64,000 nucleotides of DNA from Octopus bimaculoides (GCF_001194135.2 NC_068983.1:10384457-10448456), one strand, 5' to 3'; shown: positions 12,409-59,469, numbered from the stretch's first letter. The notes: generated by a model from the letters alone, not told the origin. Translations and numbers: made by a program.

Positions 12409-13255
12409 TGTGTGTACAGTACACTGATTTATCTATTTGAGAGATTTGCTAATGACACCTCCACCACTTCTACCAAAATTCATCATCATACAGACACCTG
12501 TGCTCAACATTTTTCACTTTGGTTGTTGTTGTTGTTTTCTCACTTTCCCCCCTCTCTCTCTTTTTACAAACAGCTGCTATTTTTAGTTGCAACTAACGAA
12601 AGGTCAGTTAACTTCTTCAAATATTATTAAATGTAAAACCAAGTAACACATCTTCACAAACACACACGTGTGTGTTTGTGTGTGTATGTAAGTATGTATA
12701 TNNNNNNNNNNTTCCTTCTCTTTTCATTTGTCTACAGGTTCAGTTTGTCAACCTGAAACAGCTTATTTTAATTAATTAATATTCTTCATTACCTAAACAG
12801 TGGCTGTCTTGTAATTCACTAAATTATATTACTCAAAATTCATTACTCTCCTCCTTGCTCCAAATATAGGTAGATATTGGTAATGTTAGTTAGACACCTT
12901 AATAATTAATGAAAAACAAACTATATATAATCTTATACAAATAGGGAAAATATACATAATACATGTAGCTGATGATTCATTCCATTGCATCTTTGTTCCT
13001 TGCCTTTGTGGTCACTTGACGAACACATGGAAACAAGAAACTCTGAGTAGTACCTAGATGTATCATCAGCTAAAAATGAACTACAAACAAACACTTCACC
13101 AACACACTAATTTAGAAATGCAAATTAGAAAGACTTCTCTCTAAGTATAGCAGAGCTACATTGTTTCATGTGCAGCATTCACTCAGACAGCATGAAAGAG
13201 CAAGACTTGCATGAAACACCAAGTAGCGAAATTTATACAAAAACATGTACACACA

Positions 13256-19200: not shown

Positions 19201-19734
19201 TTCAGTTTGCTACCACATGGTTTGTGGTTCAGTCTCACAGCAAGGCATCTTGCACAAGTGTCTTCTATTACCTCAGGCCAACCCATAACTTGCAAGCGAA
19301 TTGGTAGGTGAAACTAAATGGAAACTGTCTGTCTCTCTCTCATATATATATACTCTTTTACTCGTTTCAGTCGTTTAACTGTGGCCATGCTGGAGCACCA
19401 CCTTTAGTCGAGCAAATCGACCCCAGGACTTATTCTTTGTAAGCCTAGTACTTATTCTATCGGTCTCTTTTGCCGAACCGCTAAGTTACGGGGACTTAAA
19501 CACACCAGCATCGGTTGTCAAGCAATGGTGGGGGAACAGACACACAAACATACACAGACACATACATATATACGACAGGCTTCTTTCAGTTTCTGTCTAC
19601 CAAATTCACTCACAAGGCTTTGGTCGGCCCGAGGCTATAGTAGAAGACACTTGCCCAAGATGCTACACAGTGGGAATGAACCCGGAACCATGTTGTTGGT
19701 AAGCAAACTACTTACCACACAGCCACTCCTGCGC

Positions 19735-19779
<45 letters not shown>

Positions 19780-34500: not shown

Positions 34501-37500
34501 TGCATCAGAAAAACCATCCAACTTAGCATGGTAAAGTTTATGTGAATCACTGATGATTATAGATGTGTGTGTGTCTTCATTTTTAGAAAAGATGCCTGCA
34601 TGCTGTAAGAGGCAATTAAAATTGTTAATTTCAAAAAGGACACCCAAATGTGAAAGACTACTTCAAAAGGTCTTGTCCAACCCATGACAGTATGGTAAAG
34701 GAGATGGAAAAACAACAAAGATGATATATAAATTATATATATAAAAAACAATACAAGCTCTAACCTAAGATCTGCTCTCTTTCCATTGCTCAAGATTGGT
34801 GTTCATAAATATTCTATAATATATTTATTTCATATAATTTTTTCAAAACATTGCGAAACCCACACTTCAGTAAAAAAAAAAAAAAAAAACATCTTAAATG
34901 CAGAATGTTTATTTATTTATTTAGATTTTGACCTTAAAGTCAGCTCATTGTTTCCCTGTATTATCACATTGTCATCAGAGGTTAAAAATCAATTTTTGAT
35001 TTGTGATGATATTGCAATAAAAGAGGGTAGCTGCGCCAGCTGTAAGTCAATGTACCGATATAAGACATTATTAAGTTACATTGTTTATTAAAGAACTTCT
35101 TTAATAAACAATGTAACTTAATAATGTCTTATATCTGTACATTAAGTTACATTGTTTATTAAAGAACTTCTTACATTTTTATATTATATCGAGACAAATC
35201 TATAAAATAAATTTTTTCCAAAGCTTTTTCTTTTGGTTATTAATCTAAAATCCCAAATGTTTGATGTCCCCTTTTATTCATCATAGTCTTCCAGGCAATA
35301 ACAGAGGAATTCAAGACGGGTTGCCCCTGGGAGCTCCTCTATGCTGATGAACTGGCCCTCGTAGCAGAATCACTACCAGAACTAGAGAAGAAATTTCGGG
35401 TGTGGAAGCAAGGTTTAGAATCAAAAGGCCTTAGAGTCAATGTAGCAAAGACCAAAGTTCTAGTAAGTAGGAAGGCGAACTCGTCACACACCCTCTCAGG
35501 TAGGTGGCCCTGCTCGATCTGTAGAAAAGTTGTAGGTAGAAACTCCATAAGATGTACCCAGTGTAAGCTTTGGACACATAAGAGGTGCAGCAACATCAAA
35601 GGAAGATTAACCAGGAAAATAGCTTTCGTGTGTGGCAGATGCACAGGGGCAATAAACACCACAGATGCTCAGAAAACAGATTCCATCACACTCCAGAGAG
35701 AGAAACTAGAAATAGCTGATAGCTTCCGCTACCTAGGTGACCAAGTTAGTAGTAGAGGTGGATGCTTTGAGAGTGTTACCACTAGAATAAGAATAGCCTG
35801 GGTGAAGTTTAGAAAGCTTCTACCCCTGCTGGTGACAAAGGGCCTCTTGCTCAGAGTGAAAGGTAGATTGTACAATGCATGTGTGCGAACTGCCATGCTT
35901 CACTGCAGTGAAACATGGGCCGTGACTGCAAAGGACATGTGTAGGCTTGAAATAAATAAAGCTAGTATGATCTGCTGGATGTGTAATGTCAGTGTGCATA
36001 CATGACAGATTGTAAGCGCCCTGAGAGAAATGTTGGACATAAGATGCATCGGATGTGGCATGCAAGAGGGACTTTTGCGTTGGTATAGTTATGTACTACG
36101 GATGGATGAGGAGAGCTGTGTGAAGAAGTGCCACTCCCAAACAGTTGAAGGAATCTGGGGTAGAGGTAGACCCAGGAAGACCGGTGGCACGTAAAAAGCA
36201 CCCACTACACTTACGGAGTGGTTGGCGTTAGGAAGGGCATCCAGCTGTAGAAACATTGCCAGATCAGACTGGAGCCTGGTACAGCCTCCTGGCTTCTCAG
36301 ACCCCAGTTGAACCATCCAACCCATGCTAGCATGGAAAATAGATGTATGATGATGATGATATATATATATATATATATATACATAGTTTTAGGGAAAATA
36401 ACCAATTTTCAAGAACTCATCGATGAAAATCCACTATCACATATAGAAAAATTAATAATTAAAAGCACAATAAATGAGTATAATATAAAGTAAAGTAAAT
36501 ATCATAAGATAAATATAATAAAATAATAATAAAATAATAATAATATTATATTTATCTTATGATATTTACTTTACTTTATATTATACTCATTTATTGTGCT
36601 TTTAATTATTAACTTTTCTATATGTGATAGTGGATTTTCATCGATGAGTTCTTGAAAATTGGTTATTTTCCCTAAAACTATATATTTTATATATACTTTA
36701 TCTATAAGGCTCAATTTAATTTTAATTTTTTATAAATTGATTTTAATTGAGTTTTTTACCTGTAATTTTGGATTTTGTCCCTAATATTATTATTATTATA
36801 TATATATATATATATATATGTATAAGAAACATTTTTTCTAGTTGTTTTGTTTTACATGGTTAGGTCTTAGACAATGGGAAGTTACCTAAGGAATTCTTGC
36901 TGAATATGGATTGTAAAGGGTGTGAAGTAAGTGAGCAGTTAATAAGGACCTTGGAGAGAGGTGAAACAAATCAATGTTCAACAGGAATACATTATGACAT
37001 CTGATATTGAGAGTGGAAGAGTATCGTGTTCATGCCGTTTTTGATTAGTCCAAGTCAGTTCTATTTGACTGGGCCTATAAAGAAGGGAATCAACACCCAA
37101 TGCACGTTTACATATAAGCTGGTTAGTATTTCTGTTTAGCCTGAAGTCTGTCAGATAAGTAATCTCACATAGACACATGTGTACTTTTTCCATGCAAGTA
37201 TAGGTTGAACAGGACTTGTTAAGGCAGCATTCTACAACCAGATGTCATTCCTATCACCAGTCATTATGCATTTCAAAGTAAAGTACTTAGTCCTTTGGTC
37301 TTTTGAAAGATTATCTGCTCAACAGCTGAACATGTTTTTATGTTAAACATAAACAACACCACTACCTATGCAGTGAAATTGTTTTGTTTTGGGTTTTTTT
37401 CTGATATAGCATGTAAAGAATGGATATTTATTTTTGTATCAATCTTGACATGCTTACATTTGGAATTGGCAATTCCAGGTATCTTCCCATAATCCAGATA

Positions 37501-40500
37501 ATTCTCAATGTCCACTTTCACTAACAAACACTGACTTTATCTTCAAATCAGTTAGCTGAATTCATAGATTGTCTGGGATTCCTTACAACCTAATCTATTA
37601 CCTAGTCTTGATAAATCAGTAACAAAGCTTAATCTTTATCTTTTAACATGTGCAGGACACATATGCACACAGACCCACACACACACACACACGTTTACAT
37701 ACACACATACTCACTAACACATGTACAGATCAATACTTAAACACACACAAGTGCATAGCAGGACCTTAAAACTTATGTACATACACAGCTGCATGCATGG
37801 AGCTGTGATTTAGAAATACTAAAAAGTAGGGCAAGTTAGATAAAGAGAATAGATAAATACACACCTAGATACATTTGCATATCAAACTAAACTAGGTAGA
37901 TGGAACAAATACTGATTTATCCTTCAGCATTCAGATTTGTCTGTCAAATCTAATAATTATTCATTCACAGTGTTTTAAATTAACCATCTAGCAGCTTCAT
38001 GATTTTGATGATGAGATTGTTTATTTTTAGAATAACATAGTAGGGTAGGTGTGAAAAGCCAGGTCTGGCTGGTTAGAGCATAAAACAAGAATATTTGGAC
38101 AGGATATGGGTGCTTAAAATGCTAAAGGGTTAAATACAGGTTTCATGAAGCTGACCTTCGCTTGATGGGTAAAATTTTTATTAAATATAAAAACAGTCTC
38201 ACCTTGAAGACGGCATAAAGCAATATATACACGGCTGAAATGAAAGAAGGAAGAGATGTCAGATGCAATTTTCAAATGTTATAGTGTGTGTGTGTGTGTG
38301 TGTGTATGAGAGAGAGAGAGAGAGAGAGAGATACTCAGTAATGAATCTTATGATGATGATCATGCAATGACAGCTATATATGTGACTGTAAAAAACCTCC
38401 ATTTCTTTAATATCAATCTTCCAAAGTAAGTCAAACCATATCTAATAGTAACTACTGCACTGAAGTAATAAACTGACTAGCCTGTTAGTCTAACCACCTA
38501 CTTCTGAAATTAATGTGTAACTTCTGAGTTATTCTAGAGACACATGTACCCTTAACAGTAGCCAGCGAGGAAATGAGTAGATAGTTCAACGGTACAAACT
38601 CAGATTTGATTATTTGGAGGAATTGGATTCACTCACAAGGAATTCTGCCTGTAACCAGTTATATAAATAGCAGATCTCTAAAAACCATGGAACCCTGACT
38701 TTTGGATACAGTTCTTTAGCTTTCAAAATTCACTAACTACTCAACTTACACACACACTATAGTTTCAACCCCTAGGACTCATTAGACAAGTTACCCAGTT
38801 TGTATTGCACACAAGTGACCGATACCACAACATCCCCTCTAATTGGGGATACTGGTTTGTTGTAGAGTCAAGGCCAGCAATTTTGAAGGGAGGGGACAAG
38901 TCAATTACATTGATCCCAGTGCTCGACTGACACTTTATTTTGTTGACCCCAAACGAATGAAAGGCAAAGTTGACCTGAACAGGATTTGAACTCAGAATGT
39001 AAAGAGCTGGAAGAAATACTGCTAAATATTTGGTCCAACATGCAAACAATTCTGCCACTCACCACTTTTGCTGAGGAAATACTTCCTGAGTGTTCACAGA
39101 AAGTTAAACTTATCTCTAACTGATCGTTAATTACTTCGCATTATCTGAGCTATAAAACCAAATAAGAACAGATAAGGCAGCTGTAAATTTAAGACATTTG
39201 TCTCGTAGTTCAATATATAATATGCTACAACAACTATATCATTGTTGTTTGGTCCCATGTGAGCTCTGATTGAGCAGATTCATGATTAAAAACATTCTAA
39301 CTTGACCATTATAACATTATGTATCTAAGACCACATTATCTAATTTCTTCTGCTATTTTTAGTAGGTCACGCATCTATGTAAAAGTTCTCTCATTGGCTA
39401 TGTTGTATCCTTCAGCAAAGCACATTAGTCAGCCGGTTCCAATCCTGCCTCACTCTTTGGTTCACTGATTAGTCAATAATAAGAAAATAGCTGACAACCA
39501 GCTAAAAATACATATTGTAAATTACACCTGCCCACATACATATTAACATAGGAAAATAGACATAGAAAAGGCAAAAAACAAAAACTTTCAATTCACACAC
39601 ACACACACACACACATCCACTTATATAAATATATATATGCTGAATAACTTACCAAAGAGACCATCTTCCTAAATGGTTTGATTCCTTGCCATAGTTGTAC
39701 ACAGCTTTCTGAATACTATCACAGAGTTTAGGGATAAAATCATTCTAGAAAAGAAAAAAAAATCAATAAATGAAAATGTAAATAATAAATTTTTTATCAT
39801 TAATAATAACAATTATTATTATCACTAATATTTTTTTAAATCATTTCTTTTACAAATAACAATGATTTCTAAAAGATTTAAGATTTCACACTGTGGGGTG
39901 AAAAGAGAGGTACAGTTGATTATATTGACCCCAGTATTTCACTGCTATTAATCCCAAAAAGATGAAAGACAAAATTTTAAAACATAAAATAAAATAAACA
40001 TCTGTCATTCTACTGATTTGTGAACCCAGTATTCTAATAATTCTGTAAATCCATGTTATTTGCCCATCATTGTACCTATTATATCAATTCACTATATTTA
40101 TTCTTTCAAATCACTGTGATTTAATTTACCATTCTACTGATTTTGTTAATCCATCACTCTCTCTCCTGAAGATAGAGACTCTAATCTACATGTGTTTAGA
40201 TTCATACATGTAAATCTGGGAATACGGTATTTTCTTATACTTACTACATCTGGTCGATCATTTAGAACACTGATAAGATGAAAGAGTCTAGTTTCTTTTT
40301 CACTCAGGTAAGGTGTTGGTTGTCCTGCATTAGAGTGGATATAGTACCACTGGACCATTTCATGCTGGCTTGCCTCCAGCAACTGAAAGTAAAAGAATAA
40401 TAAAGGCATAAAAAAAAAGTTGATAGTTATATATAAAATGATGGAGGTTATAGGTTCTGACTGGCAGAATCAGAAGAAAACCTGATAAAATGTTGTGTGT

Positions 40501-43500
40501 TTAAATTCTGCTGGTGTAGATTAACCTTTTAATATCTGTGGTTTAATAAAATAAAGCATTGGTCAAACACAGGCACTGATTTAATTAACTAATTAATTAC
40601 ATACCCTTTTGGCCTTGTGCTAATATAAGAAACAATATTTATTCTGAAGAAGAAGGACAGTGCCATTATCTGCCTCCTCCACACACACACCTAACTATTA
40701 AGATCAATACAGTCGATGTTTAGATCAAACTTATGCAGAGGAAGGGTTCCAGAAAATTCTAATTCAAAGGAAAGATTGGGTAATTAGATCAGTAAAGTGT
40801 TCAGAGAGTGAGGAATGTATGGTTTTTTATTTTTTTTAATTCATTCTAGGATGTTTTGCAACAGAATCATTTGAACAGCTCTCAAGGCTGCATCTAGAAT
40901 GTATAACAATAGACTCATTTGGACAGCTTTCTAATGATACTGCTATTCAAATTGCAAAACTAAGGAGTTCTCTTTACCCTATGTTGTTTCCATTTGTCTC
41001 ACACACACACACACACACACACACATTTCTTCAGTCAATATCCATTTAATCTGTTTTTTTCAGTGAGCATATGTTTGGGTGAGAAGTTATTTGGGGCTGA
41101 AATTTTAGAGCTGGATGCTCTTCCTGTTGATGCTAAGTTCCTAGTCTCTTTAAGGTTACTTACCTTGACAATTTGCAACACCAGGCTGTTTATAACTAAT
41201 GCTGGTTCTAATCTGGAGTTAAATATTTTCTCAATCGTTCCACTTGGTGGTGATGAAATAGACTTCCAATAATTTACCAGCTCTCGTTCAACTATAAAAA
41301 GAAAACAAAAATAAATAGTTCCACGTGACAGCTTTAAGAAAAATTACAACTCATTATTTTTCTATTCTCAAACCGTTGAAATCATGAATGGTGACATAGA
41401 CAATGTCATGATGGTCTTCAATTTAACATCTACATTTCCATATTGCTATGGATTAAATAGAGTTGCTCTACAGCAACTTGCCACATCTCAGTATATGACA
41501 CATAACATGGATTCAAAATCACATTTCATATATTTACCCATTTGCCCAATATTTGAAGACGTGTATAAAATATCAGACAAAGAATTGTTACTCTAATAAA
41601 GTTCTAAAATATGAAACAAGACCAAAACATCAAATGGGTTTCACATAATACTGTTTCCTCTGAGTAGATCAAGCAAAGACCTTGATGAGCTTTTCATGGT
41701 TTGTTTGTGTTTTATAAGTCTAGTATAAAATTGATAAAACCTGGTACTACATCATGTGAAATACACATAAATACTTCTACATAGTTTTGAATTTCTTGCA
41801 AGATAAATAAAAAAAGAAAAAAGTAGCCAAGATAAAGATTTTTGTTTCTTAAATTTACCTTTATGAGAAGCTGATCTGTTTTTCTCAGCAATCACTCGGT
41901 TTTCTTTACACTGCAACAAACAATAGTTATGAAATATAACATGACATACAACATAGTATACAGTGTAAATGGGCATTGTGAACATTCAAACACTGTCTTT
42001 CCAAGTCCTGTTGCTTTTCACAGGGTATTTTTGGTCCTCTAATGTTGTTTGGTGTGTAAATCCACCTACCATTTTTGGTTGTAAATTTTGGTCTAGAAAA
42101 TTCAATTATACATGCCAGAAAATAGAGTAATAATAGTACAATGTTAAATATAAAAACTAATCGATTATCCTTCCACCCTTTCCATGCTAGCATGGGTTGG
42201 ACGATTTGACTGAGGACTGGCGAACCAGATGGCTACACCAGGCTCCAATCTGATCTGGTAGAGTTTCTACAGCTGGATGTCCTTCCTAACACCAACCACT
42301 CCGAGAGTGTAGTGGGTGCTTTTTACGTGCCACCGGCATGAAGGCCAATGCATGCACACACAACAGGCTTCTTTTAGTTTCCATCAACAAAATCCATTCA
42401 CAAGATTTTGGTTGACCCAGGATTATAGTAGAAGATACTTGCCCAAGGTGCCATGCAGTGAGACTGAGTCTAGAACCACGCGGTTGGGAAGCAAACATCT
42501 TATGACACACCTTTACCTATAGCCATACTTATGCCTATGTATCAACATTTACACGGAATCATCCCACCTCAACTAGTACAGAAAATGTGCGGTAAAACAG
42601 TAAATTTACAAAAATAACTATAAAGATGTGAGCCATTGAAGAGAAACCTAAAACATACCTGTCTTTTAGGGAGCTGTTCTTCAGTGGAATCTTCTGATGT
42701 TTTATCAATATTCAATCTTTTGTGCTTTTTCTGACTGACACTTTTGCATATTATATCTACATTGGAAGTTTCTGGAGGTTTACTTTCTGAAGTGGTAACA
42801 GAGTTATCCCCAATAACTTCTCCAGCTTTGACAAAACACTTCTTAATTTCCTCAGCCTTCTTTAACTTCAGATCAGAAATAGATTCAAACTGAACTTGTT
42901 TTCTGGTCAGTTTCTCAGTTGTCTGGAAGGCTGTAATGTGAGACTCTTTTTTGAATTCTTTCAACTGACCAGTCTTCTTGCTTAAAAGATGATGATGTGA
43001 TCGATTTAAGGACCTAAAAGATACAAATAATTATTTTAATTTAAAAAAAGACAGAATCAAACATTTTACACAAGAAATATTTTTTCAATTGGATATCGTT
43101 TGAAGGAATAACACTCCTGGTTAATTGGGGATTTTTTTGCCAAGGATATAAACACCACCAGTAAAACTAATCCAGTGATGAATTGAAGCTGGTGAAAATA
43201 TGTTTGTTGATGAACCACTACCACATCATGGAATCTCCAATTCTCAAATCAATGAAGGAGCCTTTACATGGTAGTAGCTCAATCAACCAGAAATAGCTGC
43301 TTCATTTTCTTTTTACCATGTATAACCTTTTAGCACTTAAACTGGCCCTATTAAGCCCAAATATTCTGTTTTATGCTCAAACTGGCCAGATCCAGCCTCT
43401 CGTACCTACCCTAGAATATAATTGTAATGGTAAACAATCACATTATCAAAATCTCAAAGCTACAAGATAATGTATGATTAATTCAAAATGATGCAAATAG

Positions 43501-49390: not shown

Positions 49391-49450
<60 letters not shown>

Positions 49451-52400
49451 GACGGGCTTCTTTCAGTTTCCGTCTACCAAATCCACTCACAAGGCTTTGG
49501 TTGGCCCAAGGCTATAGTAGAAGACACTTGCCCAAGGTGCCACGCAGTGGGACTGAACCTGGAACCATGTGGTTGGTAAGCAAGCTACTTACCACACAGC
49601 CACTCCTGTGCCTAATAGATGTTATTTTTTTTTCAACAAGCCAATGAATACTGAATCTCCCTCTAATCACTACCACCTTAAAAAGAACAAAAGATCTTAT
49701 ATAATGCAGTCCTAGATACATTAAGTGGCCCATTTTTTTATCAAGGTTGGCTAAAACAACAACAACAACATCCTAACTTTCATCAATACAGAAGAAGAGA
49801 CAACAAAATTTTTATTTCTTACCTGGATTTATTTAATAATTTCCTTCTGTGAGCAAATGTTGCTGAGATTTTGCTGGGGACATTTTCGTCAGATGATGAA
49901 TTATGGGAAAGATTGAATACTTTCTCAGGAGTTTGCTTGTTGCTCTTTAGCACCGGTTCATCAGGGTATTTGCCATCATGACTGTTAACATGATTTTTGT
50001 TTCCACTGCTGTTTATTGGTAGAATGGAATTTTCAGTTGGTCTTTTCCTAAAGTTGATGGACAGATGTGGAGGCAAAGTGTTCTCTACAGAACTCTTTAT
50101 TGAGATTTGAGCAACAGCAAACTTACTGTTGACTGTATCTGTGTGTGAAGAATGTTTTTTGATAAATTCTAAAGTATCTGGAAATGGAGTTATCAGAGGA
50201 GCAACTAAAATGAACTCTTCAATTAATGTCAGAATATCGTTACTAGAAGCAGTTTCATTAGATTCTCGAGCAAAGATCTTTGGATATGTTGTATCATTTG
50301 CTATGTTTTCTGACTGGGATTCCTCAGTATTGTGACAGAACCCAAAGACCTGTTCAATTCCTAATTGTTTTGAACTCACAGAATCGTTCTTCCCATTCTC
50401 TACTGCTTCGTTCTTAGATTTTATAGAATCCAACAATGAAGTAGAATGTTGGAGAAACGTTACAGAACATTTAATATGAGATGATGGTTTATTATTTACA
50501 AAATTAGTTCTTATACATGGAGCTTCTTCAACCTTCTGGGAAGGTTTACCGTTTTCTTTGATGTCTCCACAAGCTGTTCCAGTTGCAGTATCTTTTTTAT
50601 GCTCCATATTTGTCTCAATGCTGAAATTTGGCATCTGTGAATCTCCATTATTATCATCAACATCTAGAGATGTATTAAAAGAGTCACATCGGATCAGCCG
50701 ATTTTTATCTTCAGGCATTGTCTTCTCTTCAGACTGTAATTCCTTTAATTTCACCGGAAACATTTGGGAATTTGGGTCATCAGAGTTTGTACTGGTTTCT
50801 GTTCTATCACTATTATTTACAGATTTTAAAGGAATATCACTATTTGAAAATTGCTTCTCACTTTCAGAGTCTGAGCTACAAATACCAAACAAGTCATTTA
50901 TAGAGGTAGTAGATTTAGGTTTTGTTGTATAACATTTAGCTGAACTTGAGTCTATTTCTTGCTCAGAGAGTGAATCAGAAAATATCAAGCTATCTTCATT
51001 GTTCATAGTTTCTAATGCATATGAATGTTCAATTTTAATCAGGTCACCTTCTTTTGTCTCACCATTAGCTACATATTCTACTAAATTTCTTTGAAAGCCC
51101 ACTTTCTTAGAGGTGTTGTAATCCAAATCTAAAGAATCATCACTAAAATCATTAAATTCTTCACTGGAAGTATTTCCATTGTTAATCTCGGTAAAAACTT
51201 TCTCTTGGAGTTTCAGCGCTGCTGGTTCATTGGATACCAAACTAGTTCTATCATTTAGATCTTCCAATTCATTATTAGCAATAACTGTTTCAGATATTTT
51301 AGGAAGAGAAGCTGATATGGTATGTCTTTCCTTAGAATTGTGAAATTTAATTTCTGAATCATTAAATTTAGTTTCTGGATTGTTAAATATAGTTTCTGGA
51401 TTGTTAAATATAGTTTCTGGATTGTTAAATATAGTTTCTGGATTGTTAAATATAGTTGCTGGATTGTTAAATATAGTTGCTGGATTGTTAAATTTAGTTG
51501 CTGGATTGTTAAATTTAGTTTCTGGATTGTTAAATTTAGTTTCTGGATTGTTAAATTTAGTTTCTGGATTGTTAAATATAGTTGCTGGATCGTTAAATAT
51601 AGTTGCTGGATTGTTAAATTTAGTTTCTGGACTATTAAATTTAGTTTCTGGATTGTTAAATTTAGTTTCTGGATTGTTAAATTTAGTTTCTGGACTATTA
51701 AATTTAGTTTCTGGATTGTTAAATTTAGTTTCTGGACTATTAAATTTAGCTTCTGGATTGTTAAATATAGTTTTGGGATTGTTAAATTTAGTTTCTGGAT
51801 TGTTGAATATAGTTGCTGGACTATTNNNNNNNNNNNNNNNNNNNNNNNNNNNNNNNNNNNNNNNNNNNNNNNNNNNNNNNNNNNNNNNNNNNNNNNNNNN
51901 NNNNNNNNNNNNNNNNNNNNNNNNNNNNNNNNNNNNNNNNNNNNNNNNNNNNNNNNNNNNNNNNNNNNNNNNNNNNNNNNNNNNNNNNNNNNNNNNNNNN
52001 NNNNNNNNNNNNNNNNNNNNNNNNNNNNNNNNNNNNNNNNNNNNNNNNNNNNNNNNNNNNNNNNNNNNNNNNNNNNNNNNNNNNNNNNNNNNNNNNNNNN
52101 NNNNNNNNNNNNNNNNNNNNNNNNNNNNNNNNNNNNNNNNNNNNNNNGCTGGATTGTTAAATTTAGTTTCTGGACTATTAAATTTAGTTTCTGGATTGTT
52201 AAATTTAGTTTCTGGACTATTAAATTTAGCTTCTGGATTGTTAAATATAGTTTTGGGATTGTTAAATTTAGTTTCTGGATTGTTGAATATAGTTGCTGGA
52301 CTATTAAATTTAGTTTCTGGATTGTTAAATTTAGTTTCTGGATTGTTAAATTTAGTTGCTGGACTATTAAATTTAGCTTCTGGATTGTTAAATATAGTTT

Positions 52401-55400
52401 CTGGACTATTAAATTTAGTTTCTGGATTGTTAAATTTAGTTTCTGGACTATTAAATTTAGTTTCTGGACTGTTAAATTTAGTTTCTGGACTATTAAATTT
52501 AGCTTCTGGACTGTTGAATATAGTTTCTGGATTGTTAAATTTAGTTGCTGGACTATTAGATTTAGTTTCTGGATTGTTAAATTTAGCTTCTGGATTGTTG
52601 AATATAGTTTCTGGATTGTTAAATTTAGTTTCTGGACTATTAGATTTAGTTTCTGGATTGTTAAGTTTAGTTTCTGGACTATTAGATTTAGTTTCTGGAT
52701 TGTTAAATTTAGTTTCTGGATTGTTGAATATAGTTTCTGGATTGTTAAATTTAGTTTCTGGATTGTTAAATTGAGTTTCTGGATTGTTAAATCTAGTTTC
52801 TGGATTGTTAAATTTAGTTTTTAGATCATTAAATTGAGTTTCTGAATTGCTGAATTTAGTTTCTGAGTTATTAACTTTAGTTTCCAAATTGCTGAATTTA
52901 GTTTCTGAATTACTGAATTTAATTTCTGAATTGTTAAATTCAGTTTCTGAATCATTAACTTTAGTTTCTAAATTATTGACTTTAGTCTCTGAATTGTTAA
53001 AGTGAGTTTCTGAATTGTTCAATTTAATGCCTGATTTGTTAAAAAACAAGGAAAGATTTGAAGATTTATCATCTTTAGACAAAGAAAATTCATGAAGAAG
53101 GCTTTTATCATCCAAAATATTTTTAACTGCTGGGTTTTCATCTTTAAAATTTTCAGTATCTAAAGTTTGGGAGTTATTCTGTGAATGATGAGAATTAATG
53201 ATGTGATTTTGGTGATGTGGAGGTGGAGTTAGCTGCAATGTTTCAGAAATAGTTGACCTCAAGTCTGCTGCTGATAAATCTTTTGTTATTGCAGGAATTT
53301 TAGCAGACGGTGGCTCAATCTTAAAATCAACAGTTTCACTGGAATTTTCTTCAATATGGTTTCCTAAAACCTCTTTTGAATTCATTTTGTTATAATCAGA
53401 GTTTTCACCACACATGGTATTAGATTTGTTTCTATCATTGTCATTCTGATTTTTAGCCAAAGATTCTTTATGGAAATTCCTCTTCTTCCTATCTTTAGAC
53501 ATCTTTAAGGTACCTTCAGACAAATCTGAACATTTTCTTTGAGCTGATAAATTTGCATCAATTTCATTTTCTAAAGACATTACACCACAAACTGAAAGTG
53601 TTTCAGTGTTATTATAAGCATCTTCAAGGAATGTAACAGAACCAAACTTTGAATTATCAGCAGTTTGACTAAAATCTTTTGCAATATGGTTTTGCAAAAT
53701 TTTGTTTGAATCTGCTTTGCTGCAATCAGAATTATAGCCACACTTGACATCACATTTATTATCATTATCATTCTGATATTCAACCAAAGATTCACTAGTT
53801 ATATCCTGCTCCTTATTTTCTTTAGATTTCTTTAAGTTTTCATCCAACAAATTTGAACGTTTTCTTGGTACTGGTGGATTTGTATTGATTTTATCATTTA
53901 ACAATGTTTCACCATGACTTGGCGTTGTATCAGTGTAATTATAAGCAACGCTGTGATATGTTACAGAATCAGATGAAGAAACATCTCCAGAATTTATATT
54001 AGCAGAACGTGGCAAAAGTTCTGTGTCATTTATCTGGATAACGTCTGTACGGATTGCTGTGTCTGGAACACTTTCCAACTGTTTAGAATTTTCATCTTCT
54101 AAATCTTTTTTCATGCAACCTTGTTCAGCATTCGCATGACCATTACCACTTTCACTATTTTTATCACAGACAATTGTGGTAGCATTGATACCATTTTCAT
54201 TTGTTTGGTAATGATTAACCTGTAAATGATCCTCTTTCTGAGGAGATTGCAAAAGATGGCAAGAATTATCATTTGGTAGCATCACAGCACCTTGCACTTT
54301 ATTGGTTTCAGTGTCAGCATCAACTCCTTTGAGAAATTCTGTCTCCAACATTTCCGCAAAGTGGTCAACAGAACCATCATCACAACTATTCTGATCTGGA
54401 AGGCTGCAGAATGAATTTTCATCATCCTAAAATATAAATACAAATAAAATAAAATAAAATAAGCATATTAAAATTTTTAAAGTTAATAAAGAATAAAAAA
54501 GAAAAGCCGTTGGTAAACAGATTATAGCAGTGACTCCATCTAAGAATATCTGAAGAAGGAAATGTATTCCGAAATATCATCGGACTATAGATAACTAAAT
54601 TACAACAGGTATATAGTCCATTTTTTGTATTATAGTCCATTGTTGTACCATTCAAAACTTTTTATTCTTTACAAACAATACACAATGCTTCAAGCGAACT
54701 ACAATACTCTTTGTCTTTCATTTGATCTCAGGGCAAAGAAAGCCAAAGCAAATACCATTAGACATTTTATCCACTATTTTAATGACTGCTAACTTACTGC
54801 CTTATTGATGGGCCATGCTTTCGTGGTCTGTATTTGTACAGAAAATCGAGATCGAGTGAGCTTTTGCTTTTTTGCTCGACGTGTGATTTTTGTCCATGCT
54901 GAGCTCACCTTGGGACATCTGCATTATCGTTTGACAGACGTACTGCCCCAGTCAAACTCCCTGACCAAAACTGTTATATCATAACTTAAATTATTATTTT
55001 ATATCACATAACACAATATTATAATAAATTATACACATGTGAAAATATACTACATTAAAACTGAGAATGAATTACAATTTACTATACATAACACTTTATA
55101 TTGCATTGATTTTTAATACTGGCAGCACAAGGCCATGAATCTTAGAGAGGGGTGGTATAATTAATTAAACTTCAGTACCTGACCGGTAATTAATTTATTT
55201 TATTGAACCTGAAAGGATGAAATGCAAAGTCAACCTTGGTGAATTTAGAACATAGGACATAACTAAATAGTGCAAGACTGATTATCCAACATTCTAAAAA
55301 TTCTATGGTGTCATAACCGAAAACATATTGGTTTCAAATTTTGGCACAAGGCCAGCAATTTCGGGGAATGGGTAAGTCAATTACATCAACCCCATACTCA

Positions 55401-56283
55401 AATGTTACTTATTCTATCAATCTACCAATCCTAAAAGGATGAAAGGCAAAGTCAACCTTGGTGGAATTTGAACTCAGAACGTAAAGGCAGACAAAATGCT
55501 GTTAAGCATTTGCCTGGCGTGCTAATGATTCTGCCAGCTCACTACCTTTACATATCAGCAACAAACAGCACACATTTTGATGTACACAAACACTACAACA
55601 TGGCAGTGATCCAGAATGGCTACAACACAGAACCAGTGAAAGAGTACACAAGACTACTTACCTCTTCGTTATGTTCTGATGGGATAGGAGACAACATAAT
55701 TGGTAAAGCCATTTCACTAATTATACGTGCAATCTCGTCATCTTTGGATGGAAGGTTTGGAGGTGGAGAAGTAACAGCTTTAAATAAAGAGAAAATTTCA
55801 AATTAATATAATACTCTGCTCTGCTCACCACCACCATCACAGCCTGCCACATTTTAGCAAAATGAAAAAAAATTCAAGTAAAAATAAACAAACAAAAGTT
55901 ATTTTATACCTGTAAATTTACAAAATGTATATGAATATATTTATATATCATACACACACACACACACGTATGGGTGCGTGTGTGTCATCATCATCATTAT
56001 TTAACATCCGCTTTCCATGCTGGTATGGGTTGGCCAGTTTGACTGAGAACTGGCATATATATGTGTGTGTGTGTGTCTATGTTTGTCCCCCTAGCATTGC
56101 TTGACAACCAATAGTGGTGTGTTTATGTCCCCGTCACTTAGTGGTTCGGCAAAAGAGACCGATAGAATAAGTACTAGGCTTACAAAGAATAAGTCCTGGG
56201 GTCGATTTGCTCGACTAAAGGCGGTGCTCCAGCATGGCCGCAGTCAAATGACTGAAACAAGTAAAAGAGTAAAAGAGAGAGAG

Positions 56284-56320
<37 letters not shown>

Positions 56321-58773
56321 TTCTGCCTATCAAATCCACTCACAAAGCTTTGGTTTGTCTGGGTTTCTAGCAGAAGAACCTTGTCCAGGAGGTCACACAG
56401 TGGGTCTGAACCAGGAAGCATGTGGTTGGGAAGCAGACGTCTTACCTTACAGCCACAGCTACACTAATACATGTGGAGGCGCAATGGCCCAGTGGTTAGG
56501 GCAGTGGACTCGTGGTCAAAGGAGCGCGGTTTCAATTCCCAGACCAGACGTTGTGAGTGTTTATTGAGCGAAAACACCTAAAGCTCCACGAGGCTCCAGC
56601 AGGGGATGGTGGCGAACCCTGCTGTACTCTTTCACCACAACTTTCTCTCACTCTTACTTCCTGTTTCTGTTGTGCCTGTATTTCAAAGGGTCAGCTTTGT
56701 CACACTGTGTCATGCTGAATATCCCCGAGAACTACGTTAAGGGTACACGTGTCTGTGGAGTGCTCAGCCACTTGCACGTTAATTTCACGAGCAGGCTGTT
56801 CCGTTGATAGGATCAACTGGAACCCTCGACGTCGTAAGCGACGGAGTGCCAACAAACAACACTCATACATGTATGATAATGATATAATATATATTCTTAT
56901 TATAATGATTAATAAATACCATTTAATGGAAAGACATAAAAAACAAAAAACAGACGTACATCTGGTGAAATTTATAAGTTGTAATAATATACATACCAGT
57001 GTCTTGAAAGACTAGAGGGGAACTTTTTTTTTGTGCCTGTAAAGAAGAATAAAAAATGTATAAATATTTGTGGATCATACAAACAGTAATCTAAATGGTC
57101 ACCACAGACTGCCCCAGTATGGCCACAGTCAAATGGCTGCAACAGTAAATACATTAATACAGATAGTCACATCCAACAATAACTACAGTCCAATAACTGC
57201 AGTAATATATAAATAGAAGACATGTAGTGCCCATGGTTATAGCACCACAATTGTAGCTATAAATGAAGCTGTAGTGCACCAGCATGGCCACAATGCAATA
57301 ACTTTAATACTAAGTGAATTAGTATAATGCTCATACCAAAAAGCTATTTCAACTCATATTCAAAGTTATATACTCTTGTCCAATTTATAAAGTACCGTCC
57401 TCTTAACTTATGGCTAGATAGGAAATTGGTAGAGAAAGGAAAGGCTGAGAATTTTTATAAAAAAGTCATCTTCCCACACAGTTCAGAGCGATTCTCTGAA
57501 GAAACCTTCCTCTTCAGATTGCATTAAGTTTTTGAAACCTCTTCTTTATAACCTTCATCACATATTGTTGTTCTAAACAGGAGCCAGGGACTCTTCTACA
57601 AATATGCAAGACATTTAAAACACAAACATCAACAAAAGATGCTACTTTAGTCATTGACTCACATGCATAAACTGTTTCTTCTTCTCTCTATCTCTTCTAT
57701 CACTATTACAGTGGCCTGTATTTCTCTTAGAGTGTTGGACAAAATACCTGGTGGTATTAGTTCCAGCTCTCGTTGCTCTCTATTGAAACTCTTCCAAGAA
57801 ACTTGCATTTTGTCATCAATAAAATAACCCCCTAACCAAATAATGGGGTCAATGGTCTCAACTAAAGCTGGAATTTAGAGATACCAACCTAAAGAGCAGC
57901 CTTCTAGAATTCCCTCTTTAGTGAGATATTTCCTCAAAACACCAATCAACAAATGGTCACAATTTTCCAAGAGACACCAACCTACAGAATAGCTCTCTAG
58001 AATTCTTTCACAGAACAGATTTTTCTAAAGGCACCAACCTATAGAAAGGTCCTCTGGAATTGCCCCCTTGAAGGCAGCAAAGTGTCTGATGTTTGAGCTG
58101 AATACCAACCACATCAAATGCATCAATTTGGAAGTGGAAACAACCATTGCAAAAAGTCAAGGAGACAGACTATTCCACTCTCATCCTCCTCTTAATATGA
58201 CTAAAGCCATGTCATAAAACAGGTCACAACACAAGCTTTCATATTGCACCACATGCCAGAAGTATTTCAAAATATTTCACTAACACAATTTTCAGTCAGT
58301 TAAAATATTTTCCAGTTCATAAAGCAATAATCCCAGATTCCTCTTGATGTTTGGATGATTTGAGAAACAGTGAAAAGATCTAATATGACACTAAAATGAT
58401 GATAATGATGATGGCAATAATGATAATGAAAATTTAATATCGGTTTTCCATGCTGGCATGAGTAAGACAACTTAAAAGGAGCTGGCAAGCCAGAGAACCA
58501 CCCAGGATCCAGTTGTCTGCATTGACATGGTTTCTGTGGCTGAATGCTCTTCCTAACATCAGGCACTTTACAGAGTGTATTAGGTGCTTCTTATGTGACA
58601 CCAGCAGAGGTGTGCTTATATAAAAAATAAAAATATAAGAAGAAGAAGCAGCAGCAGCAGCAGCAGCAGCAGTAGGAGGAGGATACATACCTTTAGCTTG
58701 TGCATTTCTTTCTGCAGTGAGTTGAATTTTTCTTTCAGTTCTGACAACATTTGTTTATTGCCTTCAAAATTTT
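28576..58773 (-). CDS. ICE1: Little elongation complex subunit 1 (ICE1/KIAA0947)-like; exons 58773-58691, 57036-56997, 55777-55662, 54426-49823, 43013-42659, 41910-41859, 41291-41164, 40382-40245, 39744-39653, 38234-38203, 34272-34147, 33481-33405, 32343-32223, 31195-31022, 29504-29415, 28754-28576; 5' exons not located
   Basis: Sixteen AG/GT exons chain with consistent phases and no stop until TAG at 28578-28576. C-terminal segments resemble the conserved human ICE1 C-terminal domain as recalled: LCRVYIALCRLQGQLSTARIFFYNIL, GIELLSLQENWSWTNSLIRNRIGPLL and VPQQINLCCANVLLKLFPFDPGTVYPTLEIW. The N-terminal exon is coiled-coil-like (LSELKEKFNSLQKEMHKLK) and there is a large low-complexity central exon. 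The small exons at 41859-41910 and 56997-57036 are less certain. Confidence 0.82.
35049..35172. repeat. Near-perfect palindrome (47-bp arms, 1-nt centre, 1 mismatch) followed by a 32-bp direct copy of its core
   Basis: 35057-35095 is the exact reverse complement of 35097-35135; 35141-35172 equals 35070-35101. Confidence 0.92.
35282..36182 (+). mobile_element. RTE-clade LINE fragment (RT catalytic region to C-terminus), joined to a family-B tail
   Basis: GCPWELLYADELALVAES (degenerate YADD), GLRVNVAKTKVL, PHD-like finger, FRYLG, RIRIAWVKFR, LYNACVRTAMLHCSETW. Confidence 0.92.
36383..36681. repeat. Long inverted repeat, 138-bp arms with 1 mismatch, 23-nt AT spacer
   Basis: 36383-36520 versus 36544-36681 compared base by base; single mismatch at 36451/36613. 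Confidence 0.95.
37917..38133. mobile_element. piggyBac-like MITE relic; second copy in opposite orientation ~43322-43545
   Basis: Ends ttatccttcagcatt / aatgctaaagggttaa (TTAA-type termini); the internal sequence is shared between the two copies. Confidence 0.55.
45026..45413 (-). mobile_element. tRNA-derived SINE family D (ggaggcgcaatggcccagtggttagggc head, (CAA)n tail)
   Basis: Closely similar to the copy at 56475-56864; TSD agcatggt at 45018-45025 and 45414-45421. Confidence 0.9.
46480..47150 (-). mobile_element. Penelope-like element relic: GIY-YIG endonuclease C-terminus, tRNA-like segment and hammerhead-like segment
   Basis: Minus strand reads PCGCGRLYKGE...GDVEKSDIANHVWENRDHLLLWDKVKTINREHHWKIRKLKEAAYMLGYNNLLSRPS (stop at 46781-46779). 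Downstream lie TGGCATAGTGG (A-box, ~46742-46732) and CTGATGA-AGGC...GGCC-AAAAC (46582-46550). Confidence 0.75.
47534..47728. mobile_element. Tc1/mariner-type MITE relic
   Basis: Imperfect TIRs agggtggaccaaaagtca / tgacttttggcccacccc, followed by TA. Confidence 0.5.
49823..54426 (-). CDS. ICE1: Giant (~4.6 kb nominal) central exon of the ICE1-like gene, S/N/E/K-rich, predicted disordered
   Basis: Matches the 1510-aa ORF 49819..54351. Acceptor ttttag at 54428-54427; donor tccag|gtaaga at 49822. Phase 2 joins exon 43013-42659. Contains an N gap. Confidence 0.9.
51335..53025 (-). repeat. Coding minisatellite, 21-bp unit (TTTAACAATCCAGAAACTAAA on -), encoding F-N-[N/S]-P-[E/A]-T-[K/I] heptads
   Basis: Directly visible tandem array in frame within the giant exon; interrupted by the N gap at 51826-52147. 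Confidence 0.97.
54805..54961 (-). pseudogene. Decayed 28S rRNA fragment (domain V, starting at the P-loop region) in an ICE1 intron
   Basis: Reverse complement GGGAGTTTGACTGGGGCAGTACGTCTGTCAAACGATAATGCAGATGTCCCAAGGTGAGCTCAGC...GCAAAAGCTCACTCGATCTCGATTTTCTGTACAAATACAGACC is colinear with the conserved eukaryotic LSU sequence GGGAGTTTGACTGGGGCGGTACA.CTGTCAAACGGTAACGCAGGTGTCCTAAGGCGAGCTCAG..., with many substitutions. Confidence 0.88.
56475..56864 (+). mobile_element. tRNA-derived SINE family D
   Basis: 8-bp TSD atacatgt (56467-56474, 56865-56872); homologous to 45026-45413. Confidence 0.9.
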
Positions 58774-59469
58774 CTGTTGAAATAAAAAAAAGAAAGAAAG
58801 AAAAGGATAAAACTAGTTAGCAAGAAATTAACGATACAAATTTCATCAGCGTTTTCTCAATCTTTTATTTGTTTCAGTAATTTAGACTGAGGCTGTGGTG
58901 GAGGACCACTTCGAAGGTTTTCCAGTTGATTGTGTCAACCTCTGAACTTTGTGTTAGGCATTTCATTCCATCAAATGGTTACGATATCTTTTGACATAAA
59001 AGGGCATAAATCACAGGGAATGAATACCACAAGGTATTTTTTTCATTACTGATTTATCAGAAACCACTTGCAAATAAATATGACAAACTTCCACACAGTT
59101 TCCATTATCAAATTTCACTCAGAAGGCACTGGTCAGCTATGTGAATAGTTAACTCACTCAACTACAAGGTTTGTTAAAAGGTGCCACAGTGTGGAACCTT
59201 TTAATAAAGACTTGGAATAATCAGTTCCTTGTGTGTGAAATTTGGTAGACAGAAACTGTCATCATCATCATCATCATCGTTTAACGTCTGCTTTCCATGC
59301 TAGCATAGGTTGGACGATTTGACTGAGGACTGGTGAAACCGGATGGCAATACCAGGCTCCAATCTGATTTGGCAGAGTTTCTACAGCTGGATGCCCTTCC
59401 TAACGCCAACCACTCAGAGAGTATAGATATAAATATATATCTAGTTAAATCAGAGGAGTGAGGTGTTCA

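What the first reader, a model, noticed from the sequence alone, without database searches (positions are those of the whole stretch)
51335..53025. CTD-sized heptad array (F-N-N/S-P-E-T-K) inside the Little Elongation Complex scaffold ICE1
Seen: an in-frame 21-bp minisatellite gives about 55-65 heptads. Each has an aromatic residue at a fixed position and an N-P or S-P dipeptide; 13-16 S-P sites are sequenced. Both edges are degenerate Ser versions (NNSETKF, NDSEIKF) and the core is a homogeneous Pro version, so a younger unit appears to have expanded from the middle. Established: ICE1 scaffolds the LEC (ICE1/ICE2/ELL) for Pol II snRNA transcription, and the Pol II CTD is a heptad array (YSPTSPS, 52 copies in mammals) controlled by proline-directed phosphorylation and condensate formation. 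I do not recall such an array in vertebrate ICE1. Inference: this could be a lineage-specific, phospho-tunable sticker-spacer or condensate module, or a CTD-like docking array on the snRNA elongation machinery. It could equally be a tolerated expansion in a disordered region. The register differs from the CTD, so any resemblance would be analogy and not homology.
Basis: partly seen in the sequence, partly recalled or inferred. Interest (0 to 1): 0.8.

Follow-up and report, generated by a model that had tools for sequence, protein, structure and literature searches.

The report
Fast-growing heptad repeat in octopus ICE1
A real 21-base coding repeat (F-N-N-P-E-T-K, about 59 to 80 copies) sits in the linker exon of an octopus ICE1-like transcription scaffold, but it is a young, species-variable expansion in a probably disordered region and not a conserved CTD-like regulatory array.

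Summary
A strict 21-bp repeat on the minus strand (51325-53043) reads F-N-N-P-E-T-K in the frame of a 4.6-kb exon (49823-54426). There are 65 complete units plus 2 partial ones, with Ser-type edges and 15 S-P units.

The gap cannot be read through. The 157 bp on its two sides are identical, so the contig ends probably overlap. That gives 59 units if merged and about 82 if the gap is real.

The gene is an ICE1 ortholog. Its spliced C-terminal domain passes Pfam ICE1_C (29.4 bits, cut-off 27). Public records name the orthologs as a "kinase" or as hypothetical proteins.

The CTD-like, phospho-tunable reading is not supported:
- Octopus sinensis has 29 units and O. vulgaris 27, with no S-P unit in either.
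- Argonauta has about 9 degenerate units without a Pro core. The partial Sepia ortholog shows none.
- Other in-frame repeats expanded in the same exon elsewhere: 39 bp in Argonauta and 111 bp in O. sinensis.
- Core variation looks close to neutral, and the exon flanks evolve at dN/dS of about 0.45.
- AlphaFold2 gives a beta-solenoid, but a nonsense frame of the same DNA scores higher.

Best reading: a tolerated coding minisatellite in a probably disordered linker. Interest is low to moderate.

The parts
49823..54426 (-). Large central exon of the ICE1 ortholog (about 4.6 kb). It carries the array between two unique, Asn/Ser/Asp-rich flanks.
   Evidence: Open frame. Canonical ...ttttag|GAT acceptor and CAG|gtaag donor. 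Colinear with O. sinensis XP_036356934.1 residues 249-1452. dN/dS against O. sinensis is 0.48 for the N flank and 0.42 for the C flank.
52813..53043 (-). N-terminal edge of the array: 11 old units with Ser or Leu at position 4 (FNKSGIK ... FNDLKTK).
   Evidence: Unit list. The units differ from the core consensus at 2-5 bases. They match units 1-11 of O. sinensis and O. vulgaris one to one. dN/dS is about 0.2 over 77 codons.
52148..52812 (-). Pro-type core, block A: units 12-42 plus a 14-nt partial unit at the gap edge.
   Evidence: No Pfam family matches the core.
51826..52147 (.). Assembly gap of 322 N inside the array. Its content and true length are unknown.
   Evidence: It is in frame mod 3 but out of register mod 21 as written.
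51367..51825 (-). Pro-type core, block B: an 18-nt partial unit plus 21 units.
51325..51366 (-). C-terminal edge of the array: FNDSEIK and FHNSKER.
   Evidence: Orthologous to FNDSEIK and FNNSKKT in O. sinensis and O. vulgaris.
51669..51825 (.). 157 bp at the left gap edge, identical to 52149-52305, which starts one base in from the right gap edge. This is a probable contig-end overlap, so about 6-7 units may be counted twice.
   Evidence: All other internal exact repeats are 68 bp or shorter.
28579..41292 (-). Ten exons of the conserved C-terminal domain that carries the ICE1_C match. Approximate positions: 41161-41292, 40245-40385, about 39650-39732, 38201-38233, about 34145-34291, about 33408-33482, 32224-32343, 31017-31196, 29416-29502, and 28579-28755 ending in the stop codon.
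   Evidence: tblastn of the O. sinensis protein. Splice sites. Pfam ICE1_C at 29.4 bits, E 8.1e-7, cut-off 27. dN/dS is 0.14.
41860..43015 (-). Two exons between the central exon and the C-terminal domain: 42659-43015 and 41860-41913.
   Evidence: The exon at 42659-43015 is also found, at 84% identity, in a contig of a related species from the Logan assembly collection.
55662..58777 (-). Two upstream exons: about 58691-58777 (the end of the N-terminal coiled coil) and 55662-55778. Residues 1-167 of the protein lie beyond the window end.

Best explanation
This is a lineage-specific coding minisatellite in the central exon of the octopus ICE1 ortholog.

Position in the protein. That exon encodes the linker between the N-terminal coiled coil and the C-terminal domain. 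In human ICE1 these bind ELL and ICE2/ZC3H8 respectively (PMC5493778).

History.
- Shown: the octopods examined share a short stretch of about 9-13 heptads with F/L/V at position 1, E at 5 and K at 7, and Ser, Thr or an aliphatic residue at position 4.
- Inferred: a single TCA to CCA change (Ser to Pro) at position 4 made a new unit in the genus Octopus. That unit was then amplified and homogenised by unequal exchange or replication slippage.
- Shown: there are 11 Pro units in O. vulgaris, 13 in O. sinensis and 46-52 or more here. The S-P variant (AAT to AGT) arose and spread only in this genome.

Product (inferred). The product is a net-neutral, Asn-rich, low-hydropathy and probably disordered spacer with one Phe every seven residues. 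It makes the linker at least 200 residues longer than in the congeners.

Function (inferred). Its most likely status is tolerated, near-neutral length variation. Any function would be generic, such as spacer length or weak multivalent contacts, and not sequence-specific docking.
For: - Anatomy and frame.
- Gene identity and exon structure.
- Copy number. O. sinensis has 29 units (13 Pro, 0 S-P) and O. vulgaris 27 units (11 Pro, 0 S-P), both in gap-free loci. The window has 59-82.
- Shared ancestry. The core DNA consensus is identical in all three species and the edge units are one-to-one orthologous.
- Fast turnover. O. sinensis and O. vulgaris are almost identical in the flanks (dN 0.0009 and 0.0055) yet differ by gains and losses of units (dN 0.027 in the aligned edge units).
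- Distant relatives. Argonauta has about 9 degenerate units without a Pro core. The partial Sepia protein and the decapodiform transcript have none.
- Repeat-prone exon. The same exon expanded other in-frame repeats elsewhere: 39 bp in about 28 copies in Argonauta, and 111 bp in 3.0 copies in O. sinensis against a single copy here.
- Near-neutral core. There are 13 variant types, 3 of them synonymous, against about 17% expected. That is 20 synonymous and 51 non-synonymous codon differences from the consensus, mostly copies of a few variant units.
- Relaxed constraint. Exon flanks have dN/dS of 0.42-0.48, against 0.14 for the C-terminal domain.
- Disorder. The charge-hydropathy values fall on the disordered side: mean H 0.34 against a boundary of 0.42.
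- Multi-unit duplication. Exact internal repeats at shifts of 21, 42, 63, 126 and 231 bp show duplication of blocks of several units.
Against: - Phe at position 1, Asn at position 2 and the E-T-K tail are strongly kept. There is no frameshift or stop in 1.4 kb.
- The 11 old edge units show dN/dS of about 0.2, and a recognisable heptad stretch survives in Argonauta. At least the short ancestral stretch may therefore be under selection.
- DNA-level homogenisation and amino-acid selection cannot be separated within one array.
- No transcript, protein or population data were available here.
- Disorder is inferred only from composition.
Confidence: 0.75

Rival explanations
1. Functional multivalent module. 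The regularly spaced Phe 'stickers' in an Asn-rich spacer would drive partitioning of the Little Elongation Complex into Cajal-body-type condensates. Alternatively, the S-P/T sites would form a CTD-like docking array switched by phosphorylation.
For: - An aromatic residue sits every 7 residues in 57 of 65 units. The unit is net-neutral and polar.
- The array lies in the linker of a scaffold whose complex co-localises with coilin in Cajal bodies (PMC5493778).
- The old edge units show moderate constraint, with dN/dS of about 0.2.
- All six annotated isoforms or models in O. sinensis and O. vulgaris keep the array.
Against: - S-P units are absent from both congeners.
- Copy number ranges from 27 to 59-82 within one genus and about 9 in Argonauta, with none in the partial Sepia ortholog.
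- Ser and Pro swap at position 4 within the core of the congeners (FHNSETK against FHNPETK).
- Core variation is near-neutral.
- There is no match to the CTD consensus or register.
- Other unrelated repeats expand in the same exon in other lineages.
Confidence: 0.12
2. Folded beta-solenoid. Three heptads would form each 21-residue coil, with stacked Phe inside and Asn/Pro at the corners. The result would be a rigid rod of species-specific length between the two ends of ICE1.
For: - The single-sequence AlphaFold2 model has a 4-residue strand in every heptad of the Pro core. Block pLDDT reaches 93 and the best-model mean is 78.7.
- Foldseek's nearest solved structures are beta-helices: GlmU/LpxA, adhesin heads and tapirin.
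Against: - The five models range from pLDDT 43 to 79.
- Foldseek TM-scores are at most 0.46 and only one match has E <= 0.001.
- An out-of-frame, non-biological translation of the same DNA (KLNLTIQ repeats) is predicted with higher confidence: pLDDT 93.9 as a helical hairpin. Confidence on such repeats therefore does not discriminate.
- There is only one hydrophobic residue per heptad, and the charge-hydropathy values fall on the disordered side.
Confidence: 0.05
3. The array as such is an assembly artefact or is not coding: collapsed or duplicated reads, or an intronic minisatellite that only happens to be open.
For: - There is a gap inside the array. The 157 bp flanking it on both sides are identical, so part of the copy count is probably an artefact.
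- The repeat is also open in a second minus-strand frame and in one plus-strand frame.
Against: - The same array lies between the same flanks, in gap-free loci of two other Octopus assemblies and inside their annotated coding sequences.
- The frame is continuous with 962 flanking codons that show purifying selection.
- The consensus unit contains no GT dinucleotide, so internal splicing is unlikely (read directly from the sequence).
Confidence: 0.03

Closest known systems
ICE1 (little elongation complex subunit 1, KIAA0947), the scaffold of the LEC
   Same: The C-terminal domain matches Pfam ICE1_C above the curated cut-off. The overall architecture agrees: an N-terminal coiled coil, one very large low-complexity central exon and a conserved C-terminal helical domain. 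The total length is about 2000 aa. The comparison with the human gene's architecture rests on my own knowledge.
   Different: No vertebrate sequence was compared here. The partial Sepia protein and the decapodiform transcript have none. Public names for the octopod proteins are 'probable serine/threonine-protein kinase DDB_G0282963' or 'hypothetical', not ICE1. No binding partner was tested.
RNA polymerase II CTD heptads (YSPTSPS)
   Same: Both are tandem heptads with an aromatic residue at a fixed position and a Pro in most units, present in tens of copies, on a Pol II transcription protein.
   Different: The consensus and register are different. There is no conserved Ser-Pro: none in two congeners. 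Copy number is not conserved even within a genus. The array arose recently from a 21-bp minisatellite with a nearly identical DNA unit.
Coding minisatellites (VNTRs) in disordered protein regions, such as mucin and involucrin repeats or the period Thr-Gly repeat (examples from my own knowledge)
   Same: The in-frame unit is 21 bp. The centre is homogenised and the edges are degenerate. Multi-unit blocks are duplicated. Copy number turns over quickly between close species. Variation at the amino-acid level is near-neutral. The surrounding exon is repeat-prone.
   Different: The host protein is a nuclear transcription scaffold. Within-species polymorphism was not measured.
SPT5 C-terminal repeat region (CTR), a repeat array on an elongation factor that P-TEFb phosphorylates (my own knowledge)
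   Same: It is a short tandem peptide repeat on a Pol II elongation-related protein.
   Different: The SPT5 repeats are conserved across eukaryotes around a phospho-acceptor Thr/Ser-Pro. Here the S-P sites are species-specific and the unit is unrelated.
Beta-solenoid repeat proteins (left-handed beta-helix, antifreeze and ice-nucleation repeats)
   Same: The AlphaFold2 model of the Pro core looks like a three-sided solenoid, and Foldseek's nearest matches are beta-helices.
   Different: TM-scores are low. The control frame is predicted more confidently. AlphaFold2 has a known bias toward such folds for perfect repeats (PMC11795689). No sequence family matches the core.

Membership tests
ICE1 (little elongation complex subunit 1) | C-terminal ICE1_C domain (Pfam PF25817) | tested here: met
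   The window's spliced C-terminal 385 aa score 29.4 bits, E 8.1e-7, against a cut-off of 27, covering profile positions 49-188 of 193. It is the only family hit. Full-length orthologs score 22-25 bits, E 2e-5 to 1e-4, again as the only hit. A single exon alone scores 17.9 bits.
ICE1 (little elongation complex subunit 1) | N-terminal coiled coil (the ELL-binding region in human ICE1) | tested here: inconclusive
   Residues 1-167 lie outside the window. The N-terminus of the O. sinensis ortholog gives only weak hits to coiled-coil-type families. No ICE1-specific N-terminal model matched.
ICE1 (little elongation complex subunit 1) | Reciprocal best match to vertebrate or insect ICE1 | not tested
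   All three word-indexed searches returned no named relatives. The exhaustive search found only cephalopod proteins plus two unrelated repeat proteins. No ICE1 chain was found in the PDB.
ICE1 (little elongation complex subunit 1) | Binds ELL/EAF, ICE2 and ZC3H8, and acts at snRNA genes | not testable with these tools
   This needs biochemistry. It is known for human ICE1 (PMC5493778).
Pol II CTD-like phospho-heptad array | Consensus Y-S-P-T-S-P-S, or at least conserved Ser/Thr-Pro phospho-acceptor sites | tested here: not met
   The consensus is F-N-N-P-E-T-K. S-P occurs in 15 of 65 units here and in 0 of 29 and 0 of 27 units in the congeners.
Pol II CTD-like phospho-heptad array | Array conserved in presence and approximate length across related taxa | tested here: not met
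   There are 59-82 units here, 29 in O. sinensis, 27 in O. vulgaris, about 9 in Argonauta and 0 in the partial Sepia ortholog.
Coding minisatellite (VNTR) in a disordered region | Tandem unit of 10-100 bp that is a multiple of 3, with high DNA identity between units | tested here: met
   The period is 21 bp with 0% indels and 83-91% matches. Core units differ from the consensus at 0-4 bases.
Coding minisatellite (VNTR) in a disordered region | Rapid copy-number change between close relatives, with degenerate edges and a homogenised centre | tested here: met
Coding minisatellite (VNTR) in a disordered region | Length polymorphism within a species | not testable with these tools
   Only one assembly per species was available.
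Beta-solenoid repeat fold | Reliable structure prediction or a solved homologue | tested here: inconclusive
   The best AlphaFold2 model has pLDDT 78.7, and the five models span 43-79. TM-scores are at most 0.46. The off-frame control reaches pLDDT 93.9.

The most novel reading that the evidence does not exclude
The Phe-spaced, Asn-rich heptad array could be a length-tunable 'sticker-spacer' linker. It would set how strongly the octopus Little Elongation Complex partitions into Cajal-body-type condensates. In this species a recent Asn to Ser change would add about 13 proline-directed phospho-sites that switch this behaviour. That would be a naturally occurring series of about 9, 27, 29 and 59 or more units for testing how repeat valency in a transcription scaffold affects snRNA synthesis.
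Probability: 0.1. Interest if true: 0.6.

Novelty: new member of a known kind. Interest (0 to 1): 0.28.

Why it matters
The result has three practical uses.

- It identifies the cephalopod ICE1 ortholog. Public records call it a 'probable serine/threonine-protein kinase' or a hypothetical protein, and in O. bimaculoides the locus appears split into a 103-aa model and a 2081-aa model.
- It documents a clean case of a coding minisatellite that grew from about 10 to 59 or more units within one genus. The series runs from Argonauta to O. vulgaris/sinensis to this genome, inside an exon where three lineages expanded three different in-frame repeats. That makes it a useful natural series for studying the evolution of disordered regions.
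- It shows with an internal control that AlphaFold2 confidence on such repeats is not evidence of a fold.

It does not reveal a new regulatory principle for Pol II transcription.

Tried and rejected
- Pfam on the two unique flanks of the big exon found no family. Pfam on the Pro core also found none.
- A Pfam scan of a chain of all open segments between 27.7 and 32.5 kb found only the single ICE1_C exon, at 17.6 bits.
- Three word-indexed protein searches were run. The C flank gave no hit. The concatenated C-terminal exons gave only a 913-bp Logan contig of a related species. A profile of five cephalopod C-terminal domains gave only one of its own members. No named ICE1 was retrieved, so no reciprocal test against vertebrate ICE1 was possible.
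- A PDB sequence search with the C-terminal profile found nothing meaningful.
- A look-up of isoform X2 of O. sinensis found nothing on record. Isoform X1 worked.
- Placing the window in O. bimaculoides was unresolved. The fetched O. bimaculoides locus ends about 8 kb into the gene and does not overlap the window. Divergence from O. sinensis is similar for both, at 87-91%. O. bimaculoides is therefore likely but unproven.
- The first dN/dS run was contaminated by tblastn extensions into introns. It was repeated with a local-identity filter.
- The plus-strand ORF through the repeat (LLNLVSG repeats, 51380-52774) was rejected as a gene. It is confined to the repeat and has no open flanks.
- I considered and rejected using an ICE1 sequence recalled from memory as evidence.

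Full report
**1. What is in the sequence.**
Tandem Repeats Finder reports a 21-bp period without indels at 51337-51820 (23.0 copies, 91% matches) and 52149-53026 (41.8 copies, 83%). The two stretches are separated by an N run at 51826-52147. Read on the minus strand, the consensus TTTAACAATCCAGAAACTAAA is F-N-N-P-E-T-K. It lies in the frame of an open frame running from 54426 to 49822.

The 962 non-repeat codons of that frame have a chance of about 5e-34 of being open, given their composition. The next longest open segment in the 64 kb is 246 aa. The unit is found nowhere else in the window.

Counted unit by unit, there are 42 complete units on the N-terminal side of the gap and 23 on the C-terminal side, plus one partial unit at each gap edge. 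Phe is at position 1 in 57 of 65 units. Pro is at position 4 in 52 of 65 (36 N-P, 15 S-P, 1 D-P). The first 11 and the last 2 units have Ser or Leu at position 4 and differ from the core consensus at 2-9 bases. Core units differ at 0-4 bases.

**2. The gap.**
The 322 N keep the codon frame but put the two blocks one codon out of heptad register: 322 mod 21 = 7, where 10 is needed. The length is only an estimate, so neither fact is informative.

Two things do matter. First, each block is tied to the F-N-N-P-E-T-K frame independently. Block A is continuous with the N flank, and block B with the C flank and the splice donor. Any whole number of units in between keeps the frame.

Second, the last 157 bp before the gap (51669-51825) are identical to 52149-52305, which starts one base in from the right gap edge. 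No other exact internal repeat in the array exceeds 68 bp. The two contig ends therefore most likely overlap.

Merged, the array has 59 units and 13 S-P. As written it has 65 units plus 2 partial ones and 15 S-P. If the gap is real at about 322 nt, the span of 1719 bp corresponds to about 82 units. Only long reads can decide.

**3. Which gene.**
The flanks of the large exon match no Pfam family. One downstream minus-strand exon (31017-31196) gave a weak ICE1_C hit of 17.9 bits.

An exhaustive HMMER search with that exon found full-length relatives. They were identified by exact look-up:
- Octopus sinensis XP_036356934.1 and its isoforms, named 'probable serine/threonine-protein kinase DDB_G0282963'
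- O. vulgaris CAI9719414/5, 'hypothetical'
- Argonauta hians GAB1599774.1
- a partial Sepia pharaonis protein
- an unnamed decapodiform transcript

The O. sinensis protein maps colinearly onto the minus strand of the window. The mapping runs from about 58.8 kb (residue 168) to a stop codon at 28579, through 14 exons located with tblastn, and a fifteenth, small exon at 38201-38233 was placed by motif. Splice sites were inspected and look canonical for the central exon and most of the others; several boundaries are approximate. Residues 1-167 lie beyond the window.

The window's own spliced C-terminal 385 residues score 29.4 bits (E 8.1e-7) on ICE1_C. That is above the curated cut-off of 27, and it is the only family hit. 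Three divergent orthologs also hit only ICE1_C, at E 2e-5 to 1e-4.

The overall architecture adds support: an N-terminal coiled coil, a huge low-complexity exon and a conserved C-terminal domain. I therefore accept the ICE1 assignment with about 85-90% confidence. A reciprocal match to vertebrate ICE1 could not be run.

In human ICE1 the N-terminal domain binds ELL and the C-terminal domain binds ICE2 and ZC3H8. The complex co-localises with coilin (PMC5493778). The array therefore sits in the linker between the two docking ends.

**4. Comparison with relatives.**
Gap-free genomic loci were fetched for O. sinensis, O. vulgaris and Argonauta. The arrays compare as follows:

| Genome | Units | Pro at position 4 | S-P units |
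|---|---|---|---|
| Window | 59-82 (65 complete as written) | 46-52 or more | 13-15 |
| O. sinensis | 29 | 13 | 0 |
| O. vulgaris | 27 | 11 | 0 |
| Argonauta hians | about 9, degenerate | none forming a core | 0 |
| Sepia (partial), decapodiform transcript | none | - | - |

- The core DNA consensus is identical in the three Octopus genomes. The 11 N-edge and 2 C-edge units are one-to-one orthologous. Some odd core units are shared, such as the TCT (Ser) codon at position 1. A Pro core therefore already existed in their common ancestor and then grew independently.
- The S-P variant (AAT to AGT) occurs only in the window. FHN(S/P)ETK units occur only in the other two species, where Ser and Pro alternate at position 4.
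- O. sinensis and O. vulgaris are nearly identical in the flanks (dN 0.0009 and 0.0055) but differ by several gains and losses of units.
- At the same position Argonauta has units such as FNNAETR, FDNSEMK, ITNIETK, LNKIETI, FVNTETK and LNNTETE, with no Pro core.
- The same exon has expanded other in-frame repeats elsewhere. Argonauta has a 39-bp (13-aa) unit in about 28 copies. O. sinensis has a 111-bp (37-aa) unit in 3.0 copies, single-copy here at 50728-50838.

**5. Selection.**
Nei-Gojobori estimates for the window against O. sinensis are shown below. The synonymous distance is about 0.1-0.15 for the four larger regions and higher for the two small samples (0.16 and 0.25).

| Region | dN/dS |
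|---|---|
| N flank of the central exon | 0.48 |
| C flank of the central exon | 0.42 |
| C-terminal domain | 0.14 |
| N-terminal exons | 0.16 |
| 11 old edge units (77 codons only) | about 0.2 |

The exon is therefore truly coding but only weakly constrained.

Inside the core, 13 kinds of substitution are seen, 3 of them synonymous. That is 23%, against about 17% of sites being synonymous. Most of the 71 codon differences from the consensus are copies of a few variant units. This is what duplication of near-neutral variants produces. It gives no sign of selection for a particular peptide beyond Phe at position 1, Asn at position 2 and the E-T-K tail.

**6. Structure.**
A single-sequence AlphaFold2 run on the 42 units of block A made a helix of the Ser-type edge. 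It made a strand-turn solenoid of the Pro core. The best model has pLDDT 78.7, and the five models span 43-79. Foldseek's nearest solved structures are beta-helices, with TM-scores of at most 0.46.

As a control I folded the out-of-frame translation of the same DNA (KLNLTIQ repeats), which is not a protein. It was predicted with higher confidence, pLDDT 93.9, as a helical hairpin. [quoted passage not shown] Taken together, the model is not evidence of a fold.

The composition places the array on the disordered side of the charge-hydropathy boundary: mean hydropathy 0.34 against a boundary of 0.42, with net charge about 0.

One inference seems worth recording. The ancestral unit has the layout of a coiled-coil heptad, with a = F/L/V, e = E and g = K. 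In Argonauta position d is often aliphatic. The Ser to Pro change at d is helix-breaking. The amplified unit is therefore probably a non-helical derivative of a short helical stretch.

**7. Conclusion.**
The best-supported explanation is a young coding minisatellite that is tolerated in the probably disordered linker exon of the octopus ICE1 ortholog. It grew by unequal exchange or slippage from an old stretch of about 10 units. It lengthens the linker in this genome by at least 200 residues relative to its congeners (confidence about 0.75).

The CTD-like or phospho-tunable reading fails its own tests, because the S-P sites and the copy number are not conserved. A generic sticker-spacer role cannot be excluded (about 0.1). 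A beta-solenoid is unlikely (about 0.05). An artefactual or non-coding array is excluded, apart from the probable double counting at the gap.

The finding is a new member of a known kind. Its practical by-products are a correct name for a mis-annotated cephalopod gene and a natural copy-number series.

Noticed in passing
window 21975-22121 and 16271-16489, minus strand: Two exons of a MED11 (Mediator subunit 11) gene lie downstream of ICE1 on the same strand. The first matches Pfam Med11 at E 2.9e-10. The second reads GQPHEGSCYAAQKDLL..., which I recognise as MED11-like from memory, but it gave no Pfam hit on its own.
   Followed up: partly
public records of the orthologs; L005 10001-20868 and 22966-30868: The O. 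sinensis ortholog is named 'probable serine/threonine-protein kinase DDB_G0282963' and Argonauta copies that name. No kinase domain was found by Pfam, so the name looks like a low-complexity artefact. In O. bimaculoides the locus appears split into a 103-aa N-terminal model (LOC106884375) and a 2081-aa model carrying a faint ICE1_C hit.
   Followed up: partly
L002 55632-55966 (O. sinensis); window 50728-50838: A 111-bp (37-aa) unit, DIPLKSVNNSDR...KLKELQSE, is present in 3.0 copies in O. sinensis and once in the window. The O. sinensis isoforms X1-X4 differ in how many and which copies they contain.
   Followed up: partly
L004 32460-33633 (Argonauta hians): A 39-bp (13-aa, SVENNSNSDIDKP) in-frame array of about 28 copies lies upstream of the heptad stretch in the same exon. 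It is absent from the Octopus genomes.
   Followed up: partly
window about 9265-9704, 19351-19740, 43725-44105, 49196-49607, 62481-62886: Copies of an interspersed element of about 400 bp, on both strands, some next to TA or CA microsatellites. They also match several places in the O. sinensis and O. vulgaris loci at 83-89% identity. It is probably a SINE-like repeat.
   Followed up: no
window 4042-4584, minus strand: A 181-aa open segment has a Cys/His-rich stretch (CLICRKSVGRTFIRCTQCKLWTHKRCSN...) followed by sequence that looks retroelement-like. It is probably a transposon fragment.
   Followed up: no
window 52170-52820, minus strand, frame +1: The repeat is also open in a second minus-strand frame (KLNLTIQ repeats) and in one plus-strand frame (LLNLVSG repeats, 51380-52774). 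AlphaFold2 folds the KLNLTIQ frame with pLDDT 93.9, higher than the real frame.
   Followed up: yes
window 12702-12711, 13504-13513, 44106-44609, 61592-61806: Four further assembly gaps: two of exactly 10 N and two of estimated size. The gap at 44106-44609 lies in the intron after the central exon.
   Followed up: no
L001 (Logan SRR11869391 contig, 913 bp) against window 42498-43269: A short-read contig from another related species is 85% identical across the exon at 42659-43015 and its flanking intron. A further octopod therefore carries the gene. Its species could not be looked up.
   Followed up: no
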